Shown here: positions 17,501 through 46,228 of the stretch, one piece after another
Layout: every line of letters begins with the position of its first letter
Numbering within the stretch: the stretch's first letter is position 1
NCBI GenBank assembly: GCA_001179505.1
Contig: CDMY01001040.1
Coordinates: 124,001-188,000 of the forward strand
Length of the DNA: 64,000 nucleotides
Source: Vitrella brassicaformis CCMP3155
Taxonomy: Eukaryota; Protista; Chromerida
Reading direction: 5' to 3'
Notes under the pieces: generated by a model
The model's database searches: none
Told to the model about the DNA's origin: nothing
The model's input: only the letters and a program-made list of their open reading frames with translations
Translations under genes and position numbers: made by a program

Positions 17501-20500
17501 ATGGCTGATGGAGCCGATCAGCCCGTGCTGCCCCCTTTGCAGTGCGGCTTTGGGCCCACGGCGGCCGATGATGATGGCAGATCTGGGTGGCGAAGTGTAA
17601 AAGAGGTAGTGATGGCAGAACATGCTCACGGAGGGTGTGGCGGGACGGCCCGGCTGTCGTGTCTGCATCGCGAAGGACCTGCAGAGGAGCCTGCCGGGAA
17701 AGAAACCCAAACAGCAGGTGTGCAATCTGGATGGAAGATAGACGAGCAGCTCCATCCCACACAAGATGACATTTTGTTGCTTCAGAGGTTGTAGATCTAC
17801 CGGCGTCTGACCCACCTGCTGCACCGGCAGCGGCACCACAAGCACTGCCTGGGATGCAGGCTGCACCGGCAGCGGCACCACAAGCACCGCCTGGGATGCA
17901 GCAACAGGGTGAGCGGGGCATAGGGCACCTCATGTCATTGGCATCATGTGCCGGTACTTCTTCTCCCGCAGCGGCTGGGGCGTCTAATGGTGCACCGGAC
18001 CATCTGCAGCATGATGAGAGGATGGAGGGAGGGCCCGTGCCGAAGGGCGACGGCGCTGCGGGCGAGGGAGTGGCCGACGCATCTGGTGGCGGGGAGGAGG
18101 GTACTTTGAGCGAGGCCAACAACGCGTTGGCCAACCAGAGGCGGCCCCGCCCCTCACTCCTGGACAAGTGCCGCTCCATTTTCCGCGGCAAATGCGACGC
18201 CTCATCCCGCAGGTACGACAGTGTCTTCGACGGCCTCGCCGATGCGGCCACGTTCGAGGCCAACCCCGACAGTATGTACAAGGATGCCATCACCGTCACT
18301 GTCGCAGTTCCCACCCCCGCCGGCCCTGTGAGAGTGAGGGAGGACGTGTGGCGCTTCGTCGGTGAGGGAGCTGCGGGTGAGTCTAGCGGCTCCCAGCCCG
18401 GCACCTGGTTGGGCTTCAACAGGCTGGGCAAGGCCATCGCGGCAGCAAGGCAGCAGCAGCAGCAGCAGCATCCTGACAGCCGACGGGACAGCGGAGCAGC
18501 CAGCGAGACCCCATCAGCAGCAGCAGCACCGGCATCAGCAGAGCCAGAGCCTCAGGCGCCGGTAACGGAGAATCGTGGCGAGTCGGGCCGCCCCAGCTCC
18601 GTGTACGCGTCAGACGAGAAGATGATCGAAGACCTGAAGACCTACTTGATGCACCGCATCGACCCCGAGAATCGATGGTTCAGCACGGCCATGCGGGGCC
18701 TGAGGCCCGAGCATCTCACGTTCACCAAGCGGGAGTTGGGACCGGGGCAGGTGGGGGCCGTCACGGTGACGATAGGCCCGTATATCGACCCCAAGAAGGC
18801 CGATGGGATGGTGCACATCAATGCCAACGTCTACCGGCGCGAGCACAACTGGAACTTGGGCACCATCGTGACAAAATTACTGCGCGCCCGCGACAATGTG
18901 AGTTAGCGCGAGGGAGGGCTGGGGGGAGAGGGCAATGGGGTGATGAGATGTGTGTGTTGTGTGTGTTGTGTGTGTTGTGTGTGCAGGGTTGGCAGCTGGT
19001 CGGTACCACCGACGACGATAGTAGCAAGGAGTCCCTCGTGGCGCGGCTGACGCCGTCTGACCACCAGCGGCTGAGACCCAGCTACAATGTCAAGTCCTCC
19101 CGCGACCGATCGAATCCACCATCACGCAGCGGCCCTGCCACCCTCACCCCTGCTGAACAGGTACACACAACATACACCGGACTACCGCCCTTCCAAAGCC
19201 ACCCCGCCTTTTTCTGCATATCCAGGAAGCATCTGCTCTGGGCGTCTTCCTCAACAAATGCGACCCGATGTCGCGGACTTACGATGCGGCCTTCCAGGGC
19301 CTTGAGTCCCTCGTTCTTGTCACCCACGACCCCAGCAGTCGCCACCAGCAGGCCGTCGACGTGTCCGTCGGGCCGTTCGACAGCCAGCTCGGTCCCCTTC
19401 GCCTGAGGGGCAAGATGTTTCGCAACCCTTACTGTGGCGGCAGATCCCAGGCCGCCAAGAAGTCCCTCTGGGAGATGGGCAGCGTGACGGTGTTGCTCAG
19501 GCGCCTCAAGGCAGAGGGGGCAGATGCCTGCAGCAGGGACGCCAGGATAGACAGCGAGGGCGAGGTCGTCCTCGACGCCATCGGTGGCGACAGCGCGTCG
19601 GCTGCCGACCGCCGTGAGACTTCCAACGACTCCAGCCAGCTCCTGGCGGACCGCATGGTGGCCAAGAAGGGCAGCGGGTCGGGGCGGGCGAAGAACCATG
19701 AAGGGCCACCAGACGCGATGGATGAAGGATGGTCGGAGAGCTCCTCCCCCTCCCCACCCCCCTCGCCCAAACGCCCGAAGCGGAGGCAGGCCCGGCAGCA
19801 GCAGAGGGGCAAGAGGGCAGCGGATGGGCCACCCGGGGGACAGGCAGTAGTCAAGCGGCAGCTGTGCACCCATGCCGGTACTGTACGTGACAAAGGAATG
19901 GGAATGAACCGCTTCACACCACCGTACGTATCTTTCTGGCCAGGTGTGTCTGGCCCCATAGCTGAGGATGGCGACGCCATGCAGGGCGTGCGACGGCCTC
20001 TGGCACAGCTGAGTCTGCGTGAGGTGGCCGCCATCTTTGCCCGCCACCCGCTAGAAGAGCTGCGCAGCCTCGCACCAACAGTAAAGAAGGTGTGTAGGGA
20101 TATGACGGAGAGGAGAGACATCACCTGTGTGTGCACGTCTCTGCAGCATTTGTTGTCTGGGGACACGCTGGCGCACATCGCCAGTCTGACGACGCTAGAG
20201 CTGAAGACGGCGCTGGAGATACAGGCCTATGGACAGGTGGGGGGCATCATGGATGTGTGTGTGTGTCCAGTTGAGTCGGCGAGACACACTCCGTCGTGCA
20301 TGCGTGTGGATGGCTGCGATGCAGGCTGTGCAGTTGAAGAGGTGGATCGATCAGGCGCTGGCAGATGGGGTGACAACACAGACACACGCATGACAGACAA
20401 GGCAGCGTCATGTTCGCTGGGTGCTTTGGTTGTAGGTGGAGGTGCCCTCTGTGCAGTCGAGCCCCAACGCGACCCCATCTGGCACTGCCAGCGTCACATG

Positions 20501-20501
20501 A
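17501..20501 (+). CDS. Cluster gene 1: three copies of the uncharacterised domain plus C-terminal SAM-like domain
   Basis: Domains at ~18158-18450, 18622-18891, 19226-19510; SAM-like LAQLSLREVAAIF..|HLLSGDTLAHI..|LKRWIDQALADG|VEVP..*; start codon uncertain (17501 or 17854). Confidence 0.75.
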
Positions 20502-24941: not shown

Positions 24942-24972
<31 letters not shown>

Positions 24973-25431: not shown

Positions 25432-28400
25432 ATGAACTACAGCAGCATCCTCTCGACCACATCCATGGACCAAAGCGGCAGATCCGTCACACCATCTTCC
25501 TCCCTTCCGACAGCAACACCAGCAGCACCAGCCAACCAGCAGCAGTCAGCAGGAAGCACCCCGACTGTCGTCAAGCTCCGTGACACTCTCGACTTCCTTC
25601 AGAAGGTGACCCAGCAGCTGCAGGCAAGGGCCGACGAGAGGCTTAATTGCCTTCGCTATGGCATCAAGCAGCAGGGGCTGCGGCTCTTTCTCACGGCCAC
25701 GTCAGGGGCGGGAGGCGCGCCGCACGGCAAGAGCATCGACGGGGTGGGACTGCCTCAGCAAAGAGACCGAAGGGAAGACCTGGTGGTGCAGCTGTTGACA
25801 CAGGTGACCAACACGTGTCTGCGGCAAGACCGCAAGCCGCGCGTGAGGCTCTCGCTGCTGCCGGTGGAGGAGGGAGCAGATCCACTCGTGGAGGTCTCCT
25901 CCATGGGCGACAAAACCATCGTCACGCCAGACCATAAGCCTGAGCGGAAGGCTGTGTGCCGTCGATGGGATCAGAGGATGCGTGAGCAGGACGGTGACGG
26001 CCTCGTCAAGCAGGAGAAGGGCATCAAAGCACCGGCCGTCAGCTCATGTGAGGGGCGGGAACCACAAGGCTGTGGTGTATCATGAGCGTTACACGTCCTG
26101 TCGTTGCCGCCGGACTGTGTGTCGTGTCAGGTCCTCATGAGCTTGTGGCGGCATCGGCTTACCACTACGTGGCCAGCCTTCCTGCGTCCTTAGAGCCCAC
26201 ACCCACCACCCAGCCTCTGATGGCCCCGATCATGGTCCAAATGCCGCTACCCTGGTCCCCACAGACCATGCACTTCGCACCCGCTGCACCTAGTGCAGCT
26301 GCAGCGGCCGGCTTTGGGCCTTTCACGGGCTTTTGGCCTCCGCTGCTCAAGCCACTCGCGACCGCCTTACACTCGGCCAACGACAGTGGCGCCCCCGCCG
26401 CAGCTGCCGCTCAAGACAGATCGACGGATGCCCAGCAGTGCACCATCCCCGACCCCGTCCCCGTCGGTGGAAAGGGTGCGCCGGCTGACGAGAGCTTACC
26501 AGCCATGCGACAGGAGCAGCAGATTGGCACCGCCACCGGGGCGGCGTCGGCCAAGCAGCCAGCTGGCGAGAAGAAGCATGTCCGACACGAACGCCGGGAG
26601 GAGCATCTCGGCAGTGCTCCTGGTGCCGCGCAGCAGGGCGTCAAGGACCCCAGAAGCTCTGCAAATGCCATCCCTCAGCGGAGCAGCATGGCCGGTGCGC
26701 TTGTGGATCCACGATGTGTTCATTTGTGTATCGTGTGTGATGTTTGCGTGTCTTGTCCATCTGTCTGTCAGAGGACGGTGAGGACACTCTGTCCAGAGGC
26801 GGGGAGGGGGAGCAGGAGCGGCCGTCCAAGCCAGCTGGTTCCCGCGAGGCGGCTGACAGCGACGCTCAGGGGGAATGGTGGGTTGGTGAAAGGGATGACG
26901 GGACGACTGTGTACACAAACAGGGCGACGGGGGAGGTCAGCAAGGAGCCACCTGGGCTGAAATGCCGCCAAAACCCGCAGCCCGCGAGTGAGTACGTAGG
27001 AATCATATCAACCCACGCAATCCAATCCTCCGTCTGTCTATCGTGCGTGGCGTGCAGAAATTCCCTGGTACTCTCTTCCTAAGAAGCGCTCCCGCCGCCG
27101 TGCCAAAACAGACCTCCCGCGAGCTGCCGACGACTGGACGGAGACCGGTGGACGGTGCGATCCCTTGTCCGTCGCCGATGCAGCCGCGACAGGAGCCAAC
27201 CGCATCCCGCTCAGACCAAGGGAGCAGAGTCCATCCCGCAGGTGCCGTCCGAAGGTCGACAGGATGAGATCACGGTCGCCCTTACCGAGGCGCCGTGTCA
27301 AGCAGGGCCAAGGCGCCAAGGACGCAAGATCCTCTGCAGATGCCAAACCTGAGCCGCGCCACACGACCGGTAGGTTCACAATGACTCCATGATGTATTAT
27401 TCATTGTGTATCGTGTGCAATGCTTGTGCGTCTTGTCTATCTGTCAGGCGATGGTGAGCCTTTTCTGTCCAGGGGCGAGGAGTCACCTCGTTGGGGCGAC
27501 TTGCCTCCGGAGCCCCCTGAGAAGCCCCTCCGCCCCCGTCCTAACGCCAGATACCCGCGAGCTGCCGACGTCAAGACGGAGCCCGGTGTCACTGTCACGG
27601 GAGCCGACCCCATCCCGCTCAGACCTGTCTCTCCCGCTTCCACTCTCGGCGAAAAGACGCGTCTTGGTGAGAAGCATGAGGATGTCGACGTCGGCACACC
27701 GGCTCACGGTCGTGAGGAGAGGGGGGTGTGCCCTTCTGGCTCAGCAGCACAGTGGGCAGTTGATAAGTGTGCAGCCACAGACACAGACCAGCAGCAGCAG
27801 CAGGAGGAGGAGGAGGAGGACAAGCACCAGAAGGGCCACGAGCAGCAACATCATGATGGTGGAGATGGGAGCGAGGAAGGGATCGATGAGCTGTGGCATG
27901 GACCCGGTGTGCAGAGGGAGGATTTCGAAATCCACCACCAGCAGGCTGCCCCTGACGTCGCCATGCAGCGAGACGACAACGATGGCTGCAGTCGCGAGGG
28001 CCAGCACGACAGGTGCGGCATTGGTGCGGAGCCACCTGCGGCGGTCGCCGAGATGCTGCCGATGCAGATGAATCAGTCGATGGAGGCTGCAGACAGTCTG
28101 CATTGCAAGGAGACCAAGGAGGAGATTGCAGACAACGGTCCTACTCATGATCCCGCTCCCCCTCCCCTGCGCCCACAACGCGAGAACGAGGAGGCTGAGG
28201 TGCCTGGCAGCCATGTGGCGCTCCCGGCAGACCATGTGGCGCCCAGCGGCATCGATGAACATGTCGGCCAGCTGCACACGGACAAGGCGCCATCCGACCA
28301 GAGAATGAGTGACAGCGGTGTGGAGGGCGAGGGGGAGAAGGTGTCGGCCAAGGGGCACCACCACGAGGGCCCCTCGCCCACCAGCACGGGCACCGGTGAT

Positions 28401-30860
28401 GTGAGCAGCTCCACCAACGGTGACGCCACCAAGGGGGGTGGTGCCTCCCGTGTCAATGGCGTGGTGGCAAAGGGCGGTGCGGGCCATGCAGCACCCACCT
28501 CCAGCAAGGCTACCAGCAAGGCCGGCAGCGTCAAAAAACACAAGACGTAGGTGTGGGCAAGAAAGGGGACACGGCTGTTTGCACATCTGACGTGTTTTGT
28601 CAACTGGTCTCTTGTCTGCTGCTGTTGTGTCTGGTTCGCCAACATTATAGGTCCAATGTGAGCTTCGACCCCACTGGATCCGCGTCTGCCCCAGGGCTCA
28701 CGTCATCGTTGTCTGCGTCCCGTGCTCAGCCCCCGCCGCCGCCACTCAACGCAGCCGCCCAGACCAAGGGCCGCAGTGAGGATGGCAAACCGCTGGCCCC
28801 TCTCGCCTGCTTCAGAGGCCTGGCAGGGTTCTCATCCAAGGCCCCCAAGCCGCCACGCACCATCCCTCTCACACCATCCCTCGCCAGGTCCCCAGCCAAA
28901 AGGGTGCCGAAGCAGAAGGGGCAGAAGGAGGGGCACAAGCTCCAGCAGGCGTCAGTAGCAGAGCCGAGTTCATCCGCAGCAGCACCACCACCACCACCAG
29001 CAGCTAGCAACAAACAGCACCACCCACAGCCACAGCCGAAACCGCCTCGTTGTGAGTCAGCCCTCAAGCACCCGCAGCCCATTTCCCGCCTCCATATGGG
29101 TATGGGCGGCGGCCAGGCTGACAGCGATGACGAGCCCATCGCCAACCGGCCAAAAGGCAGGCGGCTCACCGCTCGCCCGGACCGATACACGCCTGACAAG
29201 GCCGCTAGTCATCGTGAGGATGGCCAGGGGGGGGCGGCTGCTGAGCACCGCGATGTCGAGATGGCCGACAGACAAGTGGACGACAAGGCTGCATGCCCCC
29301 GACCGCAGCGGCTGTCTGCAGTGGACAAAATGGCAGCAGAGCGGCACAAAGGCGGCTGCTCAGCTGCAGAGGTCGAGACCAAGGTTGCGGCAATCACGCC
29401 CGAGAAGCCCGAGGGCGACGATGGACTCAATCCAGAGGACAGCCATATCGGGGGCTCCCAGCTTGAGGTCTCTGTCGACAGCAAGGCGTCCATCGTTGGG
29501 CCATCAACCAGTCGCCGCTCCCCTGTCCCTTTGGAGGCCGACTTTGAGGCAACTCTCAAGACCAAGAGAGACACCGACGCGGCATTTGCTGGCCTGGAGG
29601 TGTCATATGCCCGCAGCGACAGCAGAGAAGACGCCTTCACTGTGACGGTTGGCACCTTTGACGACGGCTCCCGTGAGCGCTTCTACGTCCAGGCTGATGT
29701 GGTGCGTCGGGGGAGCTGGGGCTTCTCAGGTAGGGTGGTGGGTCGATGGGCGAACACCAAACACAGACAGACACAACGCATCGACACATCTGTCTGTCTG
29801 TCTGCGCTCGATCAGACATCATGAAAAAGGTCTGCCGAGCTGTCGGGCTGCACGGGCGCCCACCTGACCTGGCCTTTTATGAGTTCGTCAAGGACCCAAG
29901 CGGCCGCCGTCTGCTGCAGGGCAAGAAGCAAGCCAACAAGAGCAAGACCGATCAGGTCGGACAGCTGGACGGACCCGGCGTCTCTCGTCAGCACCCACAC
30001 TACCTTCCGGCCCACCCCAAGCGGAAGCCACTTGAGCGTGCGGGAGTGAGCAGCCCGCCGATAGCCGTGGCTGGTTCTGTCGATGGGCATGTTGGTCGGC
30101 GCGGCCTCGCAGCCACGCCATCCGAGCAGGAGAACGAGTGCAGGGAGATTTGGCGCGCGCTGTGCACGCCCGGCAAGGGCCGGGATCCTGGTGCGTATCA
30201 GAGGCTGAAGAAGATGGCCGTCTTCTCCCGCAACGTCTACTCGCAGCACGATCAGGCTGTCCGTGTGCGCGTCGGCCCCTTCGTTCAGGACACCGGGATC
30301 GATCTGTACGTCGAGGGGGAGATGTTCAGGAGCCAACTGTCACGCCGCACACGCTCATCGCAGGCCAACGGGGGATGGCAGCTGTCGCCATGGCTGCTCC
30401 CCGACAAGCTGAGGATGGTCGATGAGAGAGGTGCGCAGCTGCTCGACAACCCTCCACCCGGAGCATCTGTCGTCACGGCAGTGAGGGACGGCGCGACGAT
30501 CCACATCATCCGCGACGATTGTCTGAAGGATGTCAGTGACGTCAGCCACTCAGAACGGCGGACGGACAAGAGCCCGTCAGCGCAGCACGACCCTTCGACG
30601 CTTCTCTCGGCCACCCTGACGTCTGAGTCAGCCAAGCTGCCCTCGGCTCCCGCGGGCATGGCGGCTTCCGCCGCGCCCTCGGCCCCATTGGTGGGCGATG
30701 GTTGGGGGATGGTGGTTGATGGGGTCTCGCTGGGCAAGCGGAAGGCGCATGAGCCGCCCGTGGCTGAGGGAGAGGGGGAGTGCCGATCGACCAAGGTGCA
30801 CAAGACAGGTGGGCGACGTACTCACTCTGTCGATTTAGGTGCCGTCTGTATGTGTCGCCT

Positions 30861-30892
<32 letters not shown>

Positions 30893-31444
30893 CTAACCTG
30901 TTGATCAGATGATGGTGGTGTTGCGGTGGATGGTAGTGGGGATGTCGCTGCTGCCTGTGTCAAGAAGGTGGCACTGGAAGAGTTGGATGTGGCGGATGTC
31001 AAGCTGGCGTTGGAGAAACTGTTCGAGAATGACCCGAAGCTACTGCGCATCCTGGTGGAGAAACTGGAGGAGGTACCTACGTGGCAAATCGACAACGAGT
31101 AGATTGCTGGTGGCCGCGTGTATGTGTGTGTGTTGGTTGGTTGCCTGTGTGCCTGCCTGCCTGCAGCAAGCTATTGACGGGGCGGCGTTGGCGGGGACGA
31201 CTGAGGAGGATTGGAAGAACCTGTGGGGCGCGTCGCTGAAGATGGGACCCCGCATCAAGCTGAGGCAATGGGTGAAGAGTGCAAGACTACATGGGGTAAG
31301 TCAGTGTGGCTGGCACGCGACAGACACATAAATGCCACCAAGGACAGGCACACATCGATAGCTCACCTACCACTCTGTGTGTGTCTGCAGGTGGAGGTGC
31401 CCCAGTCGAGTGCGTCGAAGGATAACAATACCGCCATGCAGTGA
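25432..31444 (+). CDS. Cluster gene 2: N-terminal AP2-like segment, WW-like motif, two uncharacterised domains, C-terminal SAM
   Basis: Phase-compatible junctions read at 28547, 29729, 30809, 31073, 31295; SAM IDGAALAGTTEEDWKNLWGASLKMGPRIKLRQWV; ends G|VEVPQ..MQ*. Confidence 0.75.
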
Positions 31445-32409: not shown

Positions 32410-32709
32410 NNNNNNNNNNNNNNNNNNNNNNNNNNNNNNNNNNNNNNNNNNNNNNNNNNNNNNNNNNNNNNNNNNNNNNNNNNNNNNNNNNNNNNNNNNN
32501 NNNNNNNNNNNNNNNNNNNNNNNNNNNNNNNNNNNNNNNNNNNNNNNNNNNNNNNNNNNNNNNNNNNNNNNNNNNNNNNNNNNNNNNNNNNNNNNNNNNN
32601 NNNNNNNNNNNNNNNNNNNNNNNNNNNNNNNNNNNNNNNNNNNNNNNNNNNNNNNNNNNNNNNNNNNNNNNNNNNNNNNNNNNNNNNNNNNNNNNNNNNN
32701 NNNNNNNNN
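32410..32709. other. Assembly gap (300 N) flanked by poly-C and (CT)n
   Basis: Run of N in the sequence. Confidence 1.
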
Positions 32710-32714
32710 CCCCC

Positions 32715-32750
<36 letters not shown>

Positions 32751-33465: not shown

Positions 33466-36400
33466 CTACGACAAAGGCACCTCCACCTGAAGCCACCCAC
33501 CACCAACACACAACCACACACAGACAGACAGACAGGGATATGACGTACTGACGACCCCATCAGCCTAGCTGGCCAGGCCGCCTGCTTCGTGTAAGTGTAC
33601 CCCACCCACCCCGTCTCTTTTGGAGTCATTGATCCACTTGGAGAGGAGGTTCCTGAGGAGCAAGACAAGACACGACACGACGCGCGATGAGATATCTAGA
33701 TTTGTGGAGGCTTGGCGAACAGACGAGATGCGTGCGTGCATCGAACGAGCTTACCGCAGTCCGAATTCCTCCATCCTGACACATTCGCACACACACACAC
33801 ACACACACGCAGAAAGAGATGCTTAGCTCCCTCCGTGTGAGTAGGTAGGTGCTGTGTGCGGGGCGTTACTTGAGCTCGGTGGAGAGTTGGCTCTGCTGGA
33901 GGCTGCTCAACGCATTGCCGTCCAGCCGTTGCTGCAGTAAGTGAGGCAGGCCATGCCAGGCAACACAAATGGTGATTGAAGTGTAAGAGGTGGGTGGGCT
34001 ACGTGCGGTGCCTCGGTCGGGTCGGTTTGCGTACCGTATCGACATATTTGATGAGCTCGGCCGCCAGCGGCCTGGTGCGGCTCAGGTGGCTGAAGACAGC
34101 GCGGACCTCATCCACCGACAGCTCCTCAAGTCTCTTCTTGATAATGGTGCCAGGTGGACTGGCAGCTCCAGCACCACCTGCAGCACCACCTGCAGGTGAG
34201 GCAGCAGCCGAGGCAGGCTGCCCCTGTGTATCGTCCAACCCTGACAGCAGGCAGAGCAGAGCAGACACAGAACGTCATGACAAATCCATTCGCTGACTCG
34301 CCACGTCATCCCTCCCCTCCCACCTGTCTTGTGTTTCTTGTGCTTAAGATCACTGTCAGCACCGCCGTCCAGCCCCCGCTTCGCCCCTGCACCCCCACCA
34401 CCAGCGACGCCGTTCCGTCTGTGACCGCTGGCTGCCGACCGTGCATCCGACTCGCTCGCGGCCATCTTCTCATCCACAGCTGCGCACACACACACACATT
34501 CGCATATACAGAGGAGCAACCGACACAGAGGGAGGTGATCGTCAGGCGGCTGCCACCGAAACAGCTCCCTCCCTCTCCCTCTTTGTACCGATCTGTCTGT
34601 TGGTCTGTCTCGTCCGTCTGTAACGGCTCCCGTCGTAGCGCACAATCCTCTGGTCACCGTCCACGATCATGGTGGCATCCGTCGAGCTGATGAGCTGACC
34701 GAACTCCTCCCTCTGCGCCTCCCGCAGCCTCTCCACAAGCCACTGCGACACCTCCCACTGGTGCTGGCCTCCTGACGGGTTGCGATGAAAGTCTCCCTCG
34801 ATATAAATGTCGCTTCCGGGGCCGAAGGGGCCGATGCGCGCGACGACCGCCTCCTCGTGGCTGCTTGACGGGTTGTGCTCCAATCGCGCCTTGTCCTCGA
34901 GGCCGTCGTAGGCCGCGTCGTGCTCTGCAGATCGCGGATCGCACAGCCGATACCATAGCTCCTGACATTGGGCAACTTGCTCTGAGATGGAGGTGCAGGG
35001 ACGCTTGTGGTCGGTCTTGCCGCGCTTCGGTCGGGTCAGTCGGGAGGACGCTGTGGGTGGAGATGAGCGGGGAGCTCGACGGAGTGGCGAGGAGGGCAGC
35101 CCGCTGTTGAGGCCCTTGCGCTTGCCACCCTTGCCGGTCCCCTTGCCACCTCCCAATCCCTCCTTGGCCCAACCCTTGCGCGCCTCGCGCGTCTCCTGGA
35201 GGACTTGAATGGCCCTGTCGCCCTCGAGCTTGACCTCGGTGACGGTATATTGGCTGGGGAGGGGCCCGACAGCTCCCCAGCTCTCTGCTCGCTTCATCGT
35301 TCGCTGGATCTTGAGCCGCAAGTTGTTGTTGTACCACTGCTCCTTGCCTCGGGAGGGATCCCGGTGGACGTCGGCCTGCACGTAGTAATCCCTGTTGGCA
35401 CCGAAGTGGAACGGGCCGATGGTACATGTGACGGCCTCCTCGTGCTTGCTGGCCGAGGAGTTGTCCGCAAAGTACGCCTCCACACCAGCAAACAGGTCAC
35501 CGGTAAAGATGCCGCCCTCCGACTTGGATCGCCACAGTTCTCGGACCTCCTCGACGATCGCCTCCCTCTGTCGTCTCGGTGGTGGGGCTGTGTGGGGCGC
35601 TCCAGGCTGCTGGACGGGGGGCGATGCAGGCCGTCCCGCCTCGCTGGCAGCAGCTGCCGCACTGGCCGTTGGTCTCCCTCCAGCGTCGCCTGCGGCGTCA
35701 CGCCGCTGGGCAGGGTCGCTCTTGGCCACCAGGATGCGCTTGCCGTCCATCCAGACCTCGTTGAAGCCACCCGGAGAGCTCTGACCCGTCCGCGCCCTGT
35801 CGTGGGCCCGTTGGATCTTCTCCTTCAACTTGCTGAAGTACCATCTGGAGTTGCTCTGGCTCGGGTTGCGGTACACCTCGCCCCTGATGTGGTATGTGCC
35901 CAGGATGGGGTCGTTGAACGGGCCAACGATGACTGCACACACGCACAAACACACACACACACGCTCAGACATCAGATACGGCGAACAGCGACACATCTGT
36001 CTGTCCATCTATCTTTTCCGTGTTGCGTCGGTCCATACGTACCAGTGACGGCCTCCTCGTGATGGCTGGTGGGATTGTGGACGCACTCGCACTCAAGGCC
36101 GATGAACATCTCCTCAGACGCCTTGCACTTCTTGTGGATGATGTCCCTGACCTCCTGCTCCATCTCATGAGGTTGGCGGCGCTGTCGAGGCTGCGATGAC
36201 ATGGCCAACTTGGCGTCGATGACGGGGAGCTTGTGCTTGCCATCCGCCGGGCGGCCCTTTTTGGTGCTGTTGTTGCTCCTCCTGCCGTGGGGGTTGTGGC
36301 TGAGCACTCGTCTGCCGCGCAACGTGACGAGGGAGTGCACGCCCGAGTTGAAGCCCGCGTGAATGCGCAGCCTGGTCCTGCGTGCGGCTGATTGCAGAGA

Positions 36401-39400
36401 GCCGAACTCCCACCACTGCTTCTTACGATCGGTCCGCTGGTACACCTCCGCCCGGACATAGAATTCCTCCTCGTGCTCTCCATCGACCTTGCCACGGAAC
36501 GGGCCGATCTCCACCACTACTGCCCTGGAATGCTTGCTCTTGGAGTTGTACGTGAAGTCTGCCTCCAGGCCGGCGAACAGCGCATCGTACAAGGCGCTCC
36601 CGTCAGTGGTCTTGGCCTGCCAGGCATCCTTGACCTCGGCCACCGCAGCGGCCATTTCCTCCGGTGAAGGCTCATTTGGCCGGGGCGATGCGGCCTTGTC
36701 GTCCTCTTGTCTGTCGGCCATCTCGACATCGCGGTGCTCACCAGCCGCCCCCCCATGGCCATCCTCACCATGACCAGCGGCCTTGTCAGGCGTGTATCGG
36801 TCCGGGCGAGCGGTGAGCCGTTTGCCTTTTGGCCGGTTGGCGATGGGCTCGTCATCGCTGTCAGCCTGACCCCCGCCTATGTCGACGTCGAGGGGTGACT
36901 CGGAAGGGGGGCGGGGCGAATCACGGGATTGGGGTGGGGAGGCCGACTCGTCGGCGGCCATTGGACGATCAACGGGTTCAGTCGGCAGCTGTTTGGCATC
37001 ACCACCAGCGGCAGCGGCAGCAGCAGCCACACTGCTCCCGGGCGTCTCCTTCGCGTGTTCAGCATCGTCATCGTCCGTCATGGCGTCTCCATTGTTGCCC
37101 TTGGGTGAAGCGTCAGGAGCTGGTGAGCCAGAGGGACCAGGCGAGGGATCTGCGTCGGCCTTGGGCTGCTGGCCGCTCTCCCCTGCGGACCCGTCACACC
37201 CCTCGGGCCTGACAAGAGCAGCCATGTGACCATGAGGGGCGGCGGGCCCCACATGAGAGGCACGATGGTTCTTCTCCTCGTCCTCGCTGGCGCCACCGTG
37301 CTCCCAGGCATCCAGAGCTCCCTGCAGGAGGTTATAGGTCTTGCCCGCCACATCAGGCCCGCCCGCCTCTGCCTCATCTCGGGCACCGTCGCCCTCACCC
37401 TCACCCACGCCAGGCCGCTGCCCGTCATGGCCCATCTCCCCTCGCATGGCCGTGTCGGCATCGTCACTCGCATTCTTCTGGACCGGCATCTGGTGTGCTG
37501 CCTCGGGCGGGTCGAGACTGTCGAATGGATCAACAGACGGGGACGACTCGTGACGGAGGGCGTCGACATGGCTATTGGGGGCCTTGCTGTCCGCCTCACT
37601 CTGAGGCAGGATGGGAGGGGGAGCCGGCACACGAGGAGGAATGTCGTCAGTGAACGTCGTTCCATCATGCGCAGCACTAGGGGCCTCCAGCAGACGGCGA
37701 GATGACATGGGATGATCAGTTGGCTCCTTCGGCGGCTGCTCGCCATCTGGGTGCGTCTCGACAGCCACGCCGACGGAACGATCAGCCTCCAGTGACCCCC
37801 CAACGGCCACGGGCAACCTGCAGGCACCACACAGACAGAAGGAAGTTTTCCATAGGAAGTTTTCCAAAGAGATGGCCTAGGTGAGGTGCAGTGAGTGCGT
37901 CTGGCCACCCGCGGGCGCAGCGCACCTGGCCTCGTCGACACTACTGTTGGGCTTCTCTTCGGTGCACTCATTGTCCTTGCTGTCCGTCGGCATGGGACCT
38001 CCACTGTCGCCCTTGGCCGTCAGGCCATCCGCCACCTCAACAGCATCGGGCTGCTTGCTGCGCTCTCCTTCGGCAGAAGCACCCACGCTGTCGTGGGGGC
38101 CGGCTTGCGTAGCGGATGAACGATGCTGCGGCTGCGGCTGCTCTGCATCCATCGCATCTCCATCCTCAGGGGGGCCATGGTCTTGGATGGCCGTGTCGGG
38201 CCCGACACACGCATCGGCGAGCACAGGCTTCTGATGCGCCGACATGGGTGGGGGCTGCTCGTTGTCTTGTGGACTGACTGACGGTGGGGGTCCGTGACTG
38301 GTAAGTGGGGCCATGGCGGTAGCTCCGGGTGCAACGTTGACAGCAGGAAGCCCCCTCGGCTGGGTGCCCGCATCTCTGACCTTGGCTTCCTGTTTCTGAC
38401 ACGGTGAATGAGCAGCACCCTCGTCCGCGGCCTCGTCCTGCCTCATCGTCTCGCGTTCCAGGTTGACCCGGGAGGGCCGTGCCGCTTTGAGGGTCGCAGG
38501 TGCCACGTGATGCGGGGGTTGCGGAGTCGGTCGAGCTTTGACCTTCTTGTCTCTGTGCTCTGCGTGTCTGTGGTCTTGGGGCTGCATGAGGATGTCACTG
38601 GCGTCCCAGCCCACACGTCTGTCACCTGCTGACAAAAGCCAGCAACGATAGATACAACCAACTGACATGGATGTGTCAGGCCTGTACTCCCTGATGTGCG
38701 TTGGTGCATGCGTACCCACCCTGCTCTGATGGGCAAAGATCCGACACCGCCTGGTCGCCAGAGGCAGATTCACCACCGCCACCAGCCGCTGCCCCCTGGG
38801 TAGCTCTCTCAGCCGGTCGCTGCTGGCCGCGAGGACGAGGGGGGCTTATGACGGCCTGGACGCCCCCACCTCTGCCTCTGGCACTCCCCTCCATCAAGGC
38901 ATCCTGCAGCTGGTCGATCGCCGGCCCCCGATCCCGACCCCGCCCGCCACGACCCTGCCGCTCGGCTGCATTGCCGTCGGGCTCGTCATCTGACAGCTCG
39001 ATACAGACGGGCGGCTCCTTGTTGACGGAGGGGGCCGCCGCGGTGGTGGCGCCAGTCTGCTGGGCATTGCTCGTGAAGGGTGGCCTGTGCGCAGGCGGCG
39101 GACGGGGCGGGCCTCTGAGGCTCCTCATCGGAGGCCTCATTGGTAAGGGGGGTGGCGAGAATGGGGGCAGGCTGGGTGGTGAGAATGATGGCGCGTTGGG
39201 GGGCCTGTTGGTCGCAAGGTGAGAGGGCGGAGGGCGCATTGGCATCCTGAGATTCATCGGGTCTATCGTCGGCGGTCTCAGACTGACAGTAAAGACACCT
39301 CTGCCGCCAGCCGAGAGAACGCTCTTGTTCGCCGTTGCAGGCCGCGAGATGGGAGGGCCTTGATTGCTGGCATGCTGTGGCTGCAATGGCAACGCTCTCC

Positions 39401-41076
39401 CAGCGAGGAGGCTTTCCTGCCGCGACGCCCCGGCCGCCCCCTGCCGCTGCTGCTGCTGCTGCTGCTGCCCATGTCGCGGGCGTGACTCCTGCGATTGCTG
39501 GGTGGGGGACTGAGGCATCGTAGAGAAGACACTGGGAGGGGGCTGCTTGCGGCTGTGATCCATGGCCGCCGCCGGTGTCGGTCTGGCTGCCTGTGCCGCC
39601 TGCCGCTGCTGTCCCGCCCCTGATGCTCCTGTTACAGTCTTCTGGGCAGCCGGCGCGGTCGCTGTCTGTGGAGTCGCCTGACGGGACGGCCCTCCCTCCT
39701 CGACCTTGACGCGCACGCCACCCGTCTTCTGCGTCGGTACCACACCGCCGTGTCCACGTCCATTTTGACCCTTGTCGCTCCCGTCAGCCGGCTCCTCCTT
39801 GACGTCTCGACGCCAGACGGAGGGACAGTTGCGAGTCGGCCTCCCAGTGGACGTCAGGCTCCCAGAGGGGCAGCCGCTGTCCTGGGACGCTGGTCGATGG
39901 AGTGCGGGTCGGTCGGCCGCTCGCTGTGATGCACCTTCCTTGGACTGCCCTCTCTCCTGCGATTTGCCCATCGACACTCTCTTGTCATCCCGTTGAAGAG
40001 GTGGCCTCGCCTGCTGCTGCTGGTGGTGGTGGTGGTTGTGGTGGTGGGTGCCGGGGGCTGGTAGAGGGGGCAAGGCAAGCTGTGGCTGCACTTGTTTGTA
40101 CTTGTGGATGAGGGTGCTGAAGTTCCAGCTGGAGTCGGGTGACGTGCCAAGGGGTGGGCGGGACACGGACGCTTTGATCGTGATCGGGGCGCCGCCATCC
40201 TTCGTGGCCAACGGTCCCAGCGTCACTGTGCAGCTGTCGCCGTCAGCTGCGGTCACCCTGACCTGCCCGTCCGTGAGATGACAGATACACCTGAAGTCGG
40301 GGTCCTTTGAGCTGCACTTGGCCACCAGCTCATCCAGGCAGTCTCGCTCGAGGCTCGAGCTGGCTGGTGTCCATCCCGAGTAGCGCGCGGCTTGCGTGGG
40401 AGGCTTCTTGTGGCCTGAGTTGTGCTCCGTCTTGATGACTGCAGGTATGCCGACAGGACCAGGAGAGGCAGAGGCAGTGCGAGGGGGAAGATGGCGGGCG
40501 AAGGGCTTGTCATAAGGGGGGATGGGGTGAGGAATCGGACGGCCACGGACACTTCCAGCTGCCTGCACACGCCACGCAAACATGAATGATGACAACACAA
40601 CAGCGTAGCGTATGAGGGGCTGTCGGTAAGGTAATATGGTGTGGTCCAGCTGCCTACCTGAGGAGTCGCCTCGTTGGCCGGAGCGTGGACACCAGCCTTC
40701 CCCGCCGCCGGCAGGGCAGCACCGTGAGCGTTCGGTGGGCGGCAGCCGGTTGGCCGCATCCGTGCCGACGCTGCTGACGCCACAGGAGGCTGGTGAGAGC
40801 CTGGTGCAGCCATCACCGTGTGTGTGTGGCCCTTTGGGTGTGCGGCTGGTGGAGGGCTTGTGGCGCCAATGCCCAGCGAGGGCAAGTGGAGGTTAGGGAC
40901 GTCTGGTTTGGCGTGGATGGCGGCTCCAGCATCCACAGTCCGACCGCTCCCTGAGCCATACACACAGACACAGAGCGAAAACAGAAGATCCACCACGGCT
41001 CAATGCCAACGGACCGAACAGTGTGAGTAGCACGTGCGCCGCGCCCACCTGTGGCATGATGCCGCTGTGCGTCCAT
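33466..41076 (-). CDS. Cluster gene 3: five uncharacterised domains plus C-terminal SAM-like domain
   Basis: MDAQRHHAT G| start; long open exons (38.7-40.6, 37.9-38.6, 36.0-37.8, 34.6-35.9 kb) with compatible phases; SAM-like LEELSVDEVRAVF..|QRLDGNALSSL..|KMEEFGL|RNLLSKWINDSKRDG|VEVPLS*. Confidence 0.78.
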
Positions 41077-41625: not shown

Positions 41626-44600
41626 TCACGATTCGGCACCAGTGATGGCAGAGCCTGCCTCTGCTGAGGCCCCCGTATCCTCGGCCAATGCCGCAGCAAC
41701 AGCAGCAGCGACATCCCCATTCCCATCCAACAGAACACCACCATCATCTGATCAGTCACACGCACCCACAAGGCGACACATACAGAGCCTGGACACCGGT
41801 AGAGTGAGTGGCCCACCTGTCTTCTGCACCTTGGTCGGTCGGCTCTCCCCCTCTCCCTCAGCCACGGGCGGCTCATGCGCCTTCCGCTTGCCCCGCGAGA
41901 CCTCCTCAACCACCATCCCCCACCCATCGCCCACCAAGGGAGCCGCAGGTGGTCCTGACAGCCGACACAGACATACAACAGATGGACCCATGTAGCCATC
42001 TTTGCATGCCTTCCCGCCGACCGACCTGGTGGACGGTCGCCCTCTGGCTGGGCAGCTGTGGCCGCTAGCCAGTCGTCGAAATTCCGCCATACCGTGTCCT
42101 CGAATGTCACCGTCACCTCACTGGGCATCGCCGCCTCTCGTCGTGCAAGACGCACAGCCCTGGCCAGCCGCTCGAAGCCGTCCCACCCATCCCGCACATC
42201 CCACCGCAGATCGACACAGACGCTGCAGTTGTTGGACATGCTGACCTCGACCTCCACGCATCTCGACCCCTTGTCAGGCGTGCGGGTGAAAGTGGCCGCA
42301 TCGACGAGGCCCTCGAAGTCGGGCTCGTACAACGGGCTCTCCTTGTCACACATCTCTCGGAAGACGCCAGTGCACCGCTCCAGTCTTGACACCATGTCTT
42401 GCTCATCTGTGCGCCGGTCAGGGGGAGGGTGCTGAGGTGCTGGTCCGTCGGTCAAGTCCATCATCTGTCGCTCGACGGCCGACCCATCCTCAACCGCCTC
42501 CAAATCCCGCTGCACCACCGAAGGGAAGGCTGCTGGTGGTTGTGTTGGTGGTGCGGATGAACTCGGCTCTGCTACTGACGCCTGCTGGGCATCGGTCTCT
42601 GCACCGACGAACCCAACACACACAAAACACATACAAAGGCAAATATGGGCGGAATGAGTGGGCGTGGCCATCATGTCCATGATAGCCATCCAAATGGAAG
42701 CACCTCCCTACCTACCGTCTTTGGCCGGCGTACCGTCTTTGGCCGGCGGCTGTGTGTGGATGTCCCCCTGGCTGTTGCGGATGCACACCTCTGCACACAC
42801 AAACAACACAAGAACACGTGTGGCCGAAAACATGAATGATGAATGCCATGACGCCCACGTGATGCCTTGTCTTACCGGGCGGCACCTGTTCCCCCGGCAG
42901 CCAGCCCTTCCCCCGACACTCGTCGCGAAAGGCAACTGCATGCACCAAGGCCTCCCTCAGCTCGTCAGGCTCTCCCTTGGTCGGGCGGAAGTAGCGCGAC
43001 TTCCTCTCCACCTCACCGTTGTCCAGGGTCTTCTGGTAGCACATGATGAACACCTGACGCGTCTCGGAGTAAGTGACGTGGAAGCCCGGCACACGCTTGC
43101 CGTTGCACAACAGCCCCTCCCTCTGTCGCTGCTCGTTGATCATGCGGTTGGCCAGCATGCTGAGCATGGCCTTGTTGCCCCACTGGAGCGAAGGCAGCCG
43201 GTGTGACGTGAGAGAATCCCTCGCTGCGGCCGCCGCTGAGGGGGCCACCGCCAGACGATCATCTGACGGTTGGTCAATCCCGTCAGCTCTCGCGCCCTGT
43301 CCATCGGCTGATGATGAAGGCACCTGCCCACCACGGCTGTCCTGGTGCTGGCTTCCTGCTCGCTCGCGTGTTGAGGCGGACGCATCAGCGGACGCCAGGG
43401 CCTCCATCTCTTCCAGCCCGACCCCTTCCTCATCGACGGGACTCACAGAGACCTCACGGTCGGCTTGCCCCTCGGCGAACACGTCGTCTCTCGCGGCCAG
43501 GCCCGTCTGCTCTGCCGGTGGCTGCAAGCGCTTGCGTTTGCCGAAGTCGGGCGCCGCCGTGAGCTGCCTCCTGTATTTCAGAATGCGCTTGCCGTGCAGC
43601 TGAATGAAGGTGTAAAGGGATGGGTCGGGTGGGGCGCCGTTGCGCTGCCGTGCCGCTTTGATCTTGGCCCTGACGTTGCCGAGGGACCAGTAGGTCCTCC
43701 CCCGTGTCGGATCGCGATGCACCGGCGCATCGACCCAGTACTCGCCCCCGTGGCCATCGGCGAACGGCCCGAGGACGCACGTGACGGCTTCCTCGTGTGT
43801 GGACGTAGGGTCGTGAATGACGGCGCTCAAGCCCGCCTGCGTTCTCAAGCTCGAGTCGTTGTAGAAGAGCACCTTCACCTCATGGATGAGGACAGCAGAT
43901 GAGCGGGGACTTGTCGTGGGGCGGTGGCTTGGCGACAGCTCAGGACGTCCCTCTCCCTGACCCACCCTGTCGCCCTGCTCCACGGCCTCGCGAGCCATTC
44001 TTGCTCGCGCCGCAAGAACGGAACCCGTGGGGCTGCTGCCTCCTTGGGTCTCGAGAAGCTTGTCGAAGAGGTCGCCAAACTGCCACCCACTACTGCGTGT
44101 CGACGCCCGCCGACTCCCCGCCCGCCTGGCGACGCCTTTGACAGCCACGCACTGCCCGTCTGGGGTGTCGATAGGTCCCACTGTCACCTCGATCGTGCCG
44201 TCGGGATTGAGAGAGAAGTTGGTCTTGCTTTCGAGAGTGTCGAGGAACTGCCGGGCGTCGAACTCGCTCTGGTCGACTAGACTGGAGGCTGGCGTGCTCT
44301 TGCACTTGGCGACGAAGGCAGCGCGACACGTGCGGATGCACTCGTCCTCAGGATTGGTGTGCATTGGGTCGTCGCTGTCCCTGGCCTCGTGTCCATTGTC
44401 GTGTCGCCATGCTGCAGGACAGGCGTCTGTGTGCATGCCTGAGACACACGCAGAAAGGGTCAGTTTGCCAATGTGTGAGTGAGCCACCTCCTTTGTGCGT
44501 GCAATGCATCGTGTGGATGTGTACCCTTCGTGTGTGACTGCTGCGCCACTGGAGTTATCGGTGCAGGAGACAGTGGGCGAGCTTCCCTTGGGTGGGGCAT

Positions 44601-46228
44601 ATCTGGCAAAGGACGGGAGACAACGAAGCGAGTGTCGGCCGGCCAGCTCATTGTGCGAGCGTGTGAGTGTGCGTGGGTCTGCGTCACTCACCTGCAGCGC
44701 GTTCTGGGTTTTATTTTGCTCGCCTCCTCTGGTCCTCTTCGGCGAGCCTCACGGGGAGCACTACAGCAGGGGGCTCGCTCTGAGCACGACACCACAGGCA
44801 AACCGCCCCTCCGCACACGGATGACCGGTGGCTGTTGCGGGTTTGCCATACCGATTGACGGAGCACGTGATGCACCCACTTCTCGGCCTTATTGCGCACC
44901 TTCTCGTAGCGCGACTCGATCGGGGCCGAGGAACCCAACGTACACACACGCATACTGAACACACCAATGGCACACAGACATGCACATCTTACTTAGGTCG
45001 CCTGTACTCTTCATTCGTCGGTGCTTACGCTCTCCAGACAGCGTCACGGTATTGGCCCTCGTCCATCCCATCCGGCACGCCAAACTGTAGGGCCGTCGGC
45101 GGGTCGAACACCTGGTACTGCGGCTCCTCACTCACACCGCCACCAGCTCCGCCACCAACAGACGAACGGTCGTTATCTCCGCCCTCCTCACAAGCACCCG
45201 TCGGCATCAGCGCAGTATCATGCCGTGCAGCTACCTCCCCCCTCTCGTCGCTCGGCTGCTCTCCCGCTGCCGCTGCCACTGCCGCCGGCTGGTCTCCCCG
45301 CTCAGGGCCGGGACCGCTCTTGTCTGCCGGGGCGCCAACAGATCGCTGCTCGGTCGATGCACCTCCTCCATCTGCTGGCGGTGATGGTAACGTGTGTCGG
45401 TCCTCGGTGTGGGTGAGGGGTCCGTCACCACTGATGCGATCGTCGGCAGGAGGGGGTGGGCGTGGGGGACTTGGTTCACATGACGCCGGGACAGCGTCGC
45501 CAGTCTGTCCCCTCCTGGCCTTCTCGCAGTGCTGCGCCCCGTCCCTCTCGCCGTCATCTGCCTTGACACTCGCACTCTCCTTGTCAGCCAGAACCTCAAT
45601 CCACATCATGTCCCGACTGATCGCCTGCTTGGGCCTCAGCAGACGATGATTTGTCCGGCGGGGATGAATGGACCGGGGGCGACGCAGTGGGCCGGACGCG
45701 CGTTGGTAGGCGAGAGCAGGTGAGGGTGCAGGGGGTCGCGCCGTGAAGTTCACCCTTCTTCGCTGGATGGCATCGAGCACCTCATTGGTCGCCCTCTCGA
45801 ACCTCTGGTGAACCACCTCCCTCCAGCCCTCCTCCGACACAAATGGCACGACAGGCAAGTTGGTCAAATCTACCTCGCGCACGACCGCCTGGCCGCCTGC
45901 AGGTGGGCGGAACTCGCACAAGAAGCCGCCGGTGCCCGACGAGTCCCAGTCGATGTCGCTCAGCTCCGTATAATTGGGCTGGATCTCGCGCAGCTTGGCA
46001 CAAACACGTCTTGCGTGGGCTGCCAGCGCCTCAGCGGCATCAGGCTGCGATGCGATGGTGCGGCTATCTGATAGACGCACACAAACCGATCCATCCAGCA
46101 CATTTATCCAGGATGCGATGCTTGTCAGCATGAATTTGGCTTGGGTGCTTGTCGTGTCAGCAGGCCATTCGTCGTGCACCTCACGTACCTTGAGGCTCGC
46201 CCGTCTGAGGTCCGTGCCCTCCACTCAT
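41626..46228 (-). CDS. Cluster gene 4: AP2-like N-terminal segment, two uncharacterised domains, AP2 domain, one more uncharacterised domain; no SAM (could be two genes split near 44.7 kb)
   Basis: MSGGHGPQTGEPQ G|DSRT start; AP2 GFHVTYSETRQVFIMCYQKTLDNGEVERKSRYFRPTKGEPDELREALVHAVAFRDEC at ~42.9-43.1 kb; splicing at 44.45-44.95 kb unresolved. Confidence 0.65.

What the first reader, a model, noticed from the sequence alone, without database searches (positions are those of the whole stretch)
17501..46228. Four-gene cluster sharing 13 copies of an unrecognised ~100-130 aa domain
Seen: homologous blocks at ~18158-18450, 18622-18891, 19226-19510 (gene 1), 29530-29845, 30130-30425 (gene 2), 34715-34990, 35295-35560, 35805-36165, 36370-36650, 40090-40350 (gene 3) and 42140-42395, 43648-43895, 44055-44345 (gene 4). 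Consensus: helix (CRELWxxKCD), YDAxFxGLE, strand, HNPSSxHEEAV, strand (TVTIGPF), strand (YxVxG/ADVxRNP), W, helix (LxxKIxxA), often followed by a hairpin (IxLxGxRIL). The blocks are islands in disordered linkers with NLS-like basic patches. I do not recognise the family. Inference: an alpha-beta-beta-beta-alpha fold. The loop NPSSxH before TVTIG recalls the dsRBD GPxH loop, although KKxAK is missing; an AP2/MBD-like three-strand DNA-binding fold is the alternative. Together with AP2 and SAM partners this suggests a lineage-specific family of nucleic-acid or chromatin regulators.
Basis: partly seen in the sequence, partly recalled or inferred. Interest (0 to 1): 0.9.

Follow-up and report, generated by a model that had tools for sequence, protein, structure and literature searches.

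The report
Orphan repeated protein domain in Vitrella
Four expressed genes of the alga Vitrella brassicaformis carry 13 copies of a roughly 115-residue protein domain that matches no known family by sequence or by predicted shape. It sits in proteins that look like nuclear gene regulators, and what it binds is unknown.

Summary
All 13 blocks are homologous: leave-one-out HMM E-values are 1e-9 or better, and there is no further copy in the 64 kb. Two copies are split by introns. The assembly gap lies between two convergent genes and touches no copy.

The window is Vitrella brassicaformis CCMP3155. Spliced RNA contigs cover gene 3. An exhaustive profile search of 1.84 billion proteins found the domain only in about 15 Vitrella proteins, one MMETSP transcript and one metagenome contig.

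Net charge of the copies runs from -10 to +9, and no catalytic or metal motif is conserved. Partner domains are SAM-like tails (genes 1-3), an AP2-like module (gene 4) and true AP2 domains in paralogues.

Best reading: a lineage-restricted, non-catalytic binding module in nuclear AP2/SAM-type regulators, with an unknown ligand.

The scan also noted this stretch in an overlapping window. It noted a possibly related repeat on another piece of the genome, which I did not check.

The parts
17612..20498 (+). Gene 1 (P0002 / CEM39526, 775 aa, 9 exons): three domain copies plus a SAM-like tail that ends in a GVEVP exon.
   Evidence: Exact exon map of P0002 on the window; source names.
18154..18450 (+). 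Copy 1 (gene 1). No hairpin extension; carries the 'GLADAATFE' motif.
   Evidence: leave-one-out E 9e-14.
18622..18891 (+). Copy 2 (gene 1).
   Evidence: leave-one-out E 5e-11.
19220..19588 (+). Copy 3 (gene 1). It starts at an exon boundary (19226). In the tree it groups with the last copies of genes 2 and 3.
19964..20498 (+). SAM-like tail of gene 1 (P0002 residues 668-775, spread over 4 exons).
   Evidence: Atlas search: 65 of 100 feature hits are SAM_1/SAM_2 clusters, and TM is 0.63-0.67 to Ph/Scm/SFMBT/WDSUB1 SAM models. Exon map.
25432..31444 (+). Gene 2 (annotated product 1741 aa): two copies near the C-terminus, then a SAM-like tail and a VEVP exon.
   Evidence: Called gene in L003 converted to window coordinates; ORF translations.
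29531..29930 (+). Copy 4 (gene 2). The core is 29531-29740. An intron of about 29741-29814 follows, then the C-terminal helix and the PPDxxxY + hairpin in the next exon.
   Evidence: leave-one-out E 6e-15. The intron is inferred from the reading frames, not from reads.
30127..30534 (+). Copy 5 (gene 2), with extension.
   Evidence: leave-one-out E 3.5e-17.
32410..32709 (.). Assembly gap, flanked by poly-C and CT repeats. It is intergenic, between convergent genes 2 and 3.
33466..41076 (-). Gene 3 (P0001 / CEM39532, 2163 aa): five copies plus a SAM-like tail ending GVEVPLS.
   Evidence: Spliced RNA contigs in run X7 show introns at 35933-36042, 37816-37923 and 38623-38716.
33466..34142 (-). SAM-like tail of gene 3 (P0001 residues 2080-2163, several small exons).
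   Evidence: PDB SAM domain 2dkz E 0.021; Pfam SAM_KIDINS220 E 0.053; alignment with the gene 1 tail.
34617..34994 (-). Copy 6 (gene 3, last copy), with hairpin. The core was modelled at pLDDT 94.5.
35178..35573 (-). Copy 7 (gene 3), with hairpin.
35706..36178 (-). Copy 8 (gene 3), split inside strand beta-2 by the intron 35933-36042.
   Evidence: (spliced contigs in X7 and X1).
36278..36661 (-). Copy 9 (gene 3), with hairpin.
39978..40367 (-). Copy 10 (gene 3, N-terminal). It is the most divergent copy and has no hairpin.
   Evidence: Seed-HMM iE 0.4, but leave-one-out E 5e-11 with the larger profile. Covered by an X7 RNA contig.
41626..44600 (-). Gene 4 (P0003 / CEM39533, 848 aa, 6 exons): three copies and an AP2-like module; no SAM tail.
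42066..42401 (-). Copy 11 (gene 4). It pairs with copy 1 of gene 1 in the tree.
   Evidence: support 93/97.
42877..43197 (-). AP2-like module of gene 4 (P0003 residues 440-546).
   Evidence: Atlas search: 67 of 100 feature hits are AP2-bearing clusters, and TM is about 0.5 to AP2/HNH_3/Arm-DNA-bind models. Not detected by Pfam.
43555..43905 (-). Copy 12 (gene 4), with hairpin. The extended domain was modelled at pLDDT 92.7.
43945..44355 (-). Copy 13 (gene 4, N-terminal).
   Evidence: leave-one-out E 1e-11.

Best explanation
The blocks are copies of a real, expressed, independently folding domain of about 95 residues. Most copies extend to about 115 residues with a conserved beta-hairpin. The domain has no detectable relative outside Vitrella brassicaformis and its closest kin.

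It is predicted to be a two-layer alpha+beta fold. An N-terminal helix pair packs on an antiparallel sheet built around a long beta-hairpin (AVTVT.GPF / YYV.A.V.R). An invariant Trp and a C-terminal helix follow, then the hairpin.

It conserves almost only core residues and shows no catalytic or metal-binding pattern. I therefore read it as a non-catalytic binding module.

One to five copies are strung on long low-complexity linkers that carry NLS-like patches. They are combined with a C-terminal SAM-like (self-association) domain or with AP2-type DNA-binding domains.

The most likely mode of action is a multivalent nuclear regulator or scaffold. AP2 gives DNA targeting in some paralogues, the SAM tail gives self-association, and the new domain recognises a partner that is still unknown, more likely a protein or chromatin feature than naked nucleic acid.

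Shown: homology of the copies, transcription and splicing, taxonomic restriction, confident fold prediction, and absence of known relatives.

Inferred: nuclear location, the binding role, multivalency and the nature of the ligand.
For: - Homology of the 13 copies.
- Transcription and correct splicing of gene 3, including the intron inside copy 8. Four paralogue-specific letters in the same RNA run match gene 2's patch, which suggests gene 2 is transcribed too.
- Restriction to Vitrella: 19 hits in 1.84 billion representatives. The non-Vitrella hits are one MMETSP transcript, one metagenome contig and four Ig-like repeat proteins whose single repeats score only about 5 bits.
- No Pfam or PDB sequence match.
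- Two separate AlphaFold models with the same topology, pLDDT 94.5 and 92.7.
- Conserved positions are G, L, A, V, G-P-F, R, W, F, L, G; only one charged residue is conserved.
- Partner domains: true AP2 in P0011 and P0014; SAM-like tails; an AP2-like module in gene 4; the same domain + SAM-like tail architecture in the MMETSP transcript L002.
- The copy next to the SAM tail groups across genes 1-3 in the tree.
Against: - There is no direct evidence of any function, location or ligand.
- Absence of relatives rests on thresholds. E 1e-3 or better in a 1.84-billion-protein library needs about 36 bits, so a diverged single copy in Chromera or another alveolate could be missed.
- The structures are predictions from shallow alignments of paralogues.
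- The SAM and gene-4 AP2 assignments are below curated thresholds in Pfam. They rest on language-model and predicted-structure look-alikes, which are leads only.
- A conserved Arg and Trp, a basic C-terminal helix and basic residues after the hairpin are also compatible with nucleic-acid binding.
Confidence: 0.6

Rival explanations
1. The domain is itself a nucleic-acid-binding module, dsRBD-like or AP2/MBD-like. It would give these proteins extra DNA or RNA contacts.
For: - It co-occurs with AP2 domains in paralogues and with an AP2-like module in gene 4.
- It has a conserved Arg at the end of beta-3, an invariant Trp, a K/R-rich C-terminal helix and a G-K/R-R-I-L hairpin followed by basic residues.
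- On paper the helix-sheet-helix order resembles a dsRBD.
Against: - No dsRBD, AP2, MBD or integrase-arm structure appears among the best matches of any fold search.
- The same Atlas tool does recognise the AP2-like module of gene 4 but returns nothing consistent for the new domain.
- hhalign against Vitrella AP2 domains gives P = 0.36.
- Net charge varies from -10 to +9 and pI from 4.5 to 10.3.
- The dsRBD KKxAK motif is absent.
Confidence: 0.22
2. The domain is a small-ligand or lipid-binding sensor of the NTF2-like/cystatin-like kind, coupling a metabolite signal to the AP2/SAM regulators.
For: The nearest structural analogues are all cystatin/NTF2-like rolls. They include the colicin M immunity protein, a de novo cystatin fold, VirB8/TrwG, the PBP5/PBP2a N-terminal domain, MlaC, DUF4467 and Mtb12_C.
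Against: - The domain is smaller than NTF2-like cones and has a helix inserted before the last hairpin.
- No conserved polar pocket residues are seen.
Confidence: 0.1
3. The blocks are not a functional domain. They would be remnants of a repeated element or artefacts of gene prediction, and the confident models would be over-fitting.
For: The family is confined to one genome, the copies are very diverged (14-39% identity), and the alignments used for folding hold only paralogues.
Against: - Open frames are kept in all 13 copies despite deep divergence.
- Spliced transcripts exist.
- A hydrophobic-core pattern and an invariant Trp are conserved across 28 copies.
- All five models of both runs are confident, pLDDT 89.7-94.5.
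- The architecture recurs in an independent transcript and a copy occurs in a metagenome contig.
- No similarity to viral proteins.
Confidence: 0.03

Closest known systems
Cystatin-like / NTF2-like alpha+beta rolls (for example colicin M immunity protein 2xgl, de novo cystatin fold 4r80, VirB8/TrwG 4nhf, N-terminal domain of PBP5/PBP2a, Mtb12_C, DUF4467)
   Same: General architecture: an N-terminal helix packed across a curved antiparallel sheet. These are the only recurrent class among the structural matches.
dsRBD (double-stranded RNA-binding domain, Pfam dsrm)
   Same: The helix - antiparallel sheet - helix order, with the helices on one face of the sheet.
   Different: This domain has four strands plus an extra hairpin and is 95-115 aa rather than about 68. 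It has no KKxAK motif and no Pfam hit, and no dsRBD appears among the fold-search matches.
AP2/ERF and ApiAP2 DNA-binding domains (PF00847)
   Same: It occurs in the same proteins or paralogues, and it has a beta-sheet followed by a helix.
   Different: No profile similarity (P = 0.36), no Pfam hit, and no AP2 or integrase-arm structural match. The gene 4 AP2-like module does give such matches with the same tool.
Reader-repeat + SAM proteins of the Polycomb group (Scm, SFMBT, L3MBTL: MBT repeats + SAM)
   Same: The architecture is analogous: several copies of a small binding domain followed by a C-terminal SAM. The nearest models to the Vitrella tail are Ph/Scm/SFMBT SAMs.
   Different: This is an analogy of layout only. 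The repeated domain is unrelated to MBT, and neither polymerisation by the tail nor any chromatin role has been shown.

Membership tests
dsRBD (PF00035) | Significant match to the dsrm profile. | tested here: not met
   No Pfam family at E 1 or better on the nine ORF pieces that carry the copies, or at E 0.1 or better on full proteins.
dsRBD (PF00035) | An alpha-beta3-alpha fold of about 68 aa that superposes on solved dsRBDs. | tested here: not met
   No dsRBD among the best 50 matches of Foldseek or VIA-align. The two Dicer/DCL1 rows have TM 0.23-0.27 and rmsd above 12 A.
dsRBD (PF00035) | A KKxAK motif at the start of helix 2 and a GPxH loop. | tested here: not met
   The helix consensus is L..K...R, with no KKxAK. 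The NPSS.H loop lies between strands 1 and 2 and is kept in only about a third of the copies.
AP2/ERF (PF00847) | Match to the AP2 profile, or to AP2 domains of the same organism. | tested here: not met
   Pfam finds AP2 in P0011 and P0014 at other positions, never on the new domain. hhalign of the domain profile against Vitrella AP2 gives P = 0.36.
AP2/ERF (PF00847) | A three-stranded sheet plus helix that superposes on AP2 or integrase-arm structures. | tested here: not met
   None among the fold-search matches. The Atlas search on the domain gives no AP2 cluster.
MBD (methyl-CpG-binding domain) | Profile or structural match to MBD. | tested here: not met
   No Pfam hit and no MBD entry in any fold-search list.
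SAM domain (C-terminal tail of genes 1-3, not the new domain) | Match to SAM profiles or structures. | tested here: inconclusive
   Below thresholds by sequence: 2dkz E 0.021, SAM_KIDINS220 E 0.053 against a 27-bit cut-off, and no hit with profiles. However, 65 of 100 Atlas feature hits and all 10 structure rows are SAM domains, TM 0.63-0.67.
Any Pfam-A family (2025 copy) | Gathering-threshold hit covering the block. | tested here: not met

The most novel reading that the evidence does not exclude
The domain is a new fold that arose, or diverged beyond recognition, in the Vitrella lineage. It would be a new class of chromatin- or nucleic-acid-recognition module working beside AP2 domains and a polymerising SAM tail. 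In that case a free-living relative of apicomplexans built part of its gene-regulatory toolkit from a domain found nowhere else.
Probability: 0.25. Interest if true: 0.75.

Novelty: categorically new. Interest (0 to 1): 0.6.

Why it matters
Chromerids are the closest photosynthetic relatives of apicomplexan parasites, and their regulators are dominated by expanded AP2 proteins. This is a well-folded domain present in about 17 Vitrella genes, in up to five copies per protein, and joined to AP2-type and SAM-like modules. That makes it a candidate new building block of transcriptional or chromatin control in this lineage. It is also a clean target for structure determination, because it has no relative in PDB, AlphaFold DB clusters, BFVD or the ESM Atlas.

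The value is limited by three things. The family is confined to one little-studied organism. No function is known. Lineage-specific orphan domains are common in protists.

Tried and rejected
I ran no environmental DNA scan.
- The search for homologous proteins with P0003 returned only P0003 itself.
- A search with an RRM ORF of contig L001 did not reveal which organism that contig comes from. Whether P0008 (L001) and P0007 (L002) are Vitrella or close relatives stays open. Their GC content, 58% and 62%, is Vitrella-like.
- Profiles of the C-terminal tails found no SAM in the PDB.
- hhalign between the AP2-like modules and true Vitrella AP2 gave no signal. That alignment was small and poor.
- Atlas feature search on the new domain gave only scores around 0.5, which is noise.
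- Four bacterial or vertebrate Ig-like repeat proteins in the profile search were rejected as summed weak matches, about 5 bits per repeat.
- I considered a C..C..H..H zinc site in the helix and loop and rejected it, because the residues are not kept across copies.
- Literature searches found no description of the family or of its accessions. The PFG paper that mentions Vitrella concerns an unrelated protein.
Full report
**Observation.** An HMM from seven copies recovered the other six from a six-frame translation of the whole window. Independent E-values ran from 6e-9 to 0.4, the weakest being the N-terminal copy of gene 3. With 28 copies (A3) the HMM finds exactly these 13 places and nothing else in the 64 kb. 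In a leave-one-out test every copy scores E 1e-9 or better. Pairwise identity among the window's copies is only 14-39%. One Trp is invariant. The best-kept positions are G-L after helix 1, A-V-x-V-T-x-G-P-F in strand 2, Y-V-x-A-x-V-x-R in strand 3, W-x-F, then L..K...R in the last helix.

**The gap.** The N run at 32410-32709 is flanked by poly-C and a CT microsatellite, and no ORF crosses it meaningfully. In the public annotation gene 2 ends at 31444 and gene 3 ends at 33466 (coordinates converted from L003). The gap is therefore intergenic, between two convergent 3' ends, and affects no copy. I could not test whether the scaffold join is correct, so the adjacency of genes 1-2 to genes 3-4 rests on the assembly. 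DNA patches shared between gene 2 and genes 3 and 4 show these genes are related regardless of adjacency.

**Source and gene models.** The proteins are CEM39526 (gene 1, 775 aa, 3 copies), CEM39532 (gene 3, 2163 aa, 5 copies) and CEM39533 (gene 4, 848 aa, 3 copies) of Vitrella brassicaformis CCMP3155. Gene 2 is annotated as 25432-31444 with a 1741 aa product and carries 2 copies.

The cluster is interrupted by a RING-finger gene and an RF-1 gene between genes 1 and 2. The stretch 44711-46228 belongs to a fifth gene without a copy.

Two copies are split by introns. Copy 8 is split at 35933-36042. Copy 4 is split at about 29741-29814, which I inferred from the reading frames.

**Transcription.** Contigs of a 2013 run (X7) lie on gene 3 in spliced form. 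They skip 35933-36042, 37816-37923 and 38623-38716, with GT..AG ends on the minus strand, and they join at 34589. This is exactly as in the annotated protein. Two further RNA-labelled runs carry the 35933-36042 splice, and a genomic run (X3) is unspliced. All five copies of gene 3 are covered.

Four 'other letters' in one X7 contig (36741-36775) are exactly the letters of the 93%-identical patch in gene 2. This suggests gene 2 is transcribed too.

**Distribution.** A profile of 12 copies was scored against 1.84 billion representative proteins. It gave 19 hits at E 1e-3 or better.
- Thirteen are Vitrella proteins.
- One is an MMETSP transcript (P0007).
- One is an ORF on an 8.7-kb ENA metagenome contig (P0008).
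- Four are Ig-like repeat proteins. Their single repeats score only about 5 bits, so they are summed noise.

Two more Vitrella proteins appear only as AlphaFold DB cluster representatives, A0A0G4FW33 and A0A0G4FRN4. I infer that they are Vitrella from their accession range. With gene 2 this makes about 17 genes. Several sit in other local clusters: P0005, P0010 and P0020 share one contig, and P0011 and P0014 share another.

Nothing from Chromera, apicomplexans, dinoflagellates or any other group passed the threshold. A weak single copy scoring under about 36 bits could still have been missed.

**Known families.**
- Pfam-A gave no family on the ORF pieces or the full proteins.
- A profile search of PDB sequences gave only E of about 1 to a cytokine receptor.
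- The literature library holds no paper naming these accessions. The chromerid genome paper describes AP2 expansion but not this domain.

**Structure.** AlphaFold2 on copy 6 with 12 paralogous copies gave pLDDT 94.5 and pTM 0.83, with the order helix, four strands, helix. Copy 12 with its extension and 28 copies gave pLDDT 92.7. Its order is two N-terminal helices, three long strands, a short Trp-bearing bridge, a helix, and the hairpin modelled at pLDDT of about 91-93. The two independent queries agree.

Fold searches found no relative:
- Foldseek against PDB: E > 0.1 and TM < 0.4.
- AlphaFold DB's 2.3 million clusters: only the two clusters inferred to be Vitrella paralogues.
- BFVD: nothing.
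- ESM Atlas shape search: TM 0.6 or less for the core and below 0.45 for the extended domain.

**Partner modules.**
- *True AP2.* Pfam finds true AP2 pairs at the C-termini of paralogues P0011 and P0014.
- *Gene 4 module.* The module in gene 4 (P0003 residues 440-548) is not seen by Pfam. It does give 67 of 100 AP2-cluster feature hits, and structural neighbours of AP2/HNH_3/Arm-DNA-bind type, in the Atlas.
- *SAM-like tail.* The tails of genes 1-3 align with each other and with those of P0009, P0012, P0016 and the L002 transcript, ending in a G-V-x-V-P exon. They give sub-threshold SAM matches: 2dkz E 0.021 and SAM_KIDINS220 E 0.053. The Atlas result is consistent, with SAM_1/SAM_2 for 65 of 100 feature hits and TM 0.63-0.67 to Ph, Scm, SFMBT and WDSUB1 SAMs.
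- *Control.* The same Atlas tool returns nothing coherent for the new domain. This serves as an internal control.

**What argues about function.** Linkers are depleted in hydrophobic residues and rich in P/S/G/A/Q, with K-K/R-x-K/R patches. Net charge of the copies runs from -10 to +9, which does not fit a uniform nucleic-acid binder. Conserved positions are nearly all core-type. Only one Arg is widely kept, and the semi-conserved Cys and His residues are not consistent enough for a metal site. hhalign against Vitrella AP2 domains shows no relation.

A maximum-likelihood tree of 28 copies is deep and poorly resolved, with a median end branch of 0.78. It does group the copy next to the SAM tail across genes 1, 2 and 3 (support 84/85). 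It also groups copy 1 of gene 1 with copy 11 of gene 4 (93/97), and copies 7-9 of gene 3 with copy 12 of gene 4 (88/86). Part of the array therefore predates the gene duplications.

**Conclusion.** The dsRBD/AP2-like idea is not supported.

My best explanation is a non-catalytic binding module, used in multiple copies in nuclear AP2/SAM-type regulators. The layout is analogous to reader-repeat + SAM proteins such as Scm and SFMBT. The ligand is unknown. I put roughly 0.6 on this reading as a whole, 0.2 on direct nucleic-acid binding and 0.1 on a small-ligand sensor.

The family is new by every test I could run. The absence of relatives rests on thresholds and on predicted structures.

The scan also noted this stretch in an overlapping window (s1-242733). 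It noted a possibly related repeat in an AP2 cluster on another piece of the genome (s1-216079), which I did not check.

Noticed in passing
window 29102-29304 vs 36678-36880; 30680-30954 vs 41702-41945; 28942-29001 vs 42529-42588: Gene 2 shares DNA patches of 93%, 80% and 92% identity with genes 3 and 4 on the opposite strand. The patches lie in linker regions, not in the domain copies. This looks like recent gene conversion or segment exchange among the cluster's genes.
   Followed up: partly
window 36741, 36755, 36769, 36775: Four 'other letters' at the end of an RNA contig of run X7 are exactly gene 2's letters in the 93% patch. The contig is therefore an assembler chimera at the shared patch, not editing or strain variation. 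Incidentally it suggests that gene 2 is transcribed.
   Followed up: yes
window 20439-20498, about 31380-31444, about 33466-33651; L002 about 1690-1704: Genes 1-3 end in a tiny last exon starting VEVP straight after the SAM-like domain. The MMETSP transcript has GVRVP and P0016 has LKVP at the same place. The purpose of this conserved tail is unknown.
   Followed up: no
P0016 residues about 195-270 and P0019 residues about 88-165 (other Vitrella contigs): By eye, each has a further, very diverged N-terminal copy (C..F...., strands, W.WQHM...L..RG). The HMM barely sees it: iE 0.08 in P0019. The family may be larger than counted.
   Followed up: no
P0005 residues 180-315 (Vitrella contig of 300,752 bases): There is a near-identical internal duplication of about 60 residues inside one copy. 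Three related small genes (P0005, P0010, P0020) lie on the same contig. This is either a recent tandem duplication or an assembly or gene-model artefact.
   Followed up: no
window 21046-21765 (-) and 24017-25063 (+): A C3HC4 RING-finger ORF (E 1.3e-8) and an RF-1 domain ORF (E 1.3e-21) lie between gene 1 and gene 2. They are unrelated to the family.
   Followed up: no
P0009 and P0012 (other Vitrella contigs): These two paralogues each have one copy of the new domain, several AP2-like modules preceded by an N-terminal helix (for example EGVKLQKK...YAHVLQAVMDAARYRDDL), and a SAM-like tail. Pfam does not recognise these modules.
   Followed up: partly
L001 (ENA ERZ893784, contig k147_5863585): This 8.7-kb metagenome contig has 58% GC and encodes a full copy with hairpin (P0008). 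P0008 is not clustered with any annotated Vitrella protein. The contig may come from an uncultured relative or from an unannotated Vitrella locus.
   Followed up: partly
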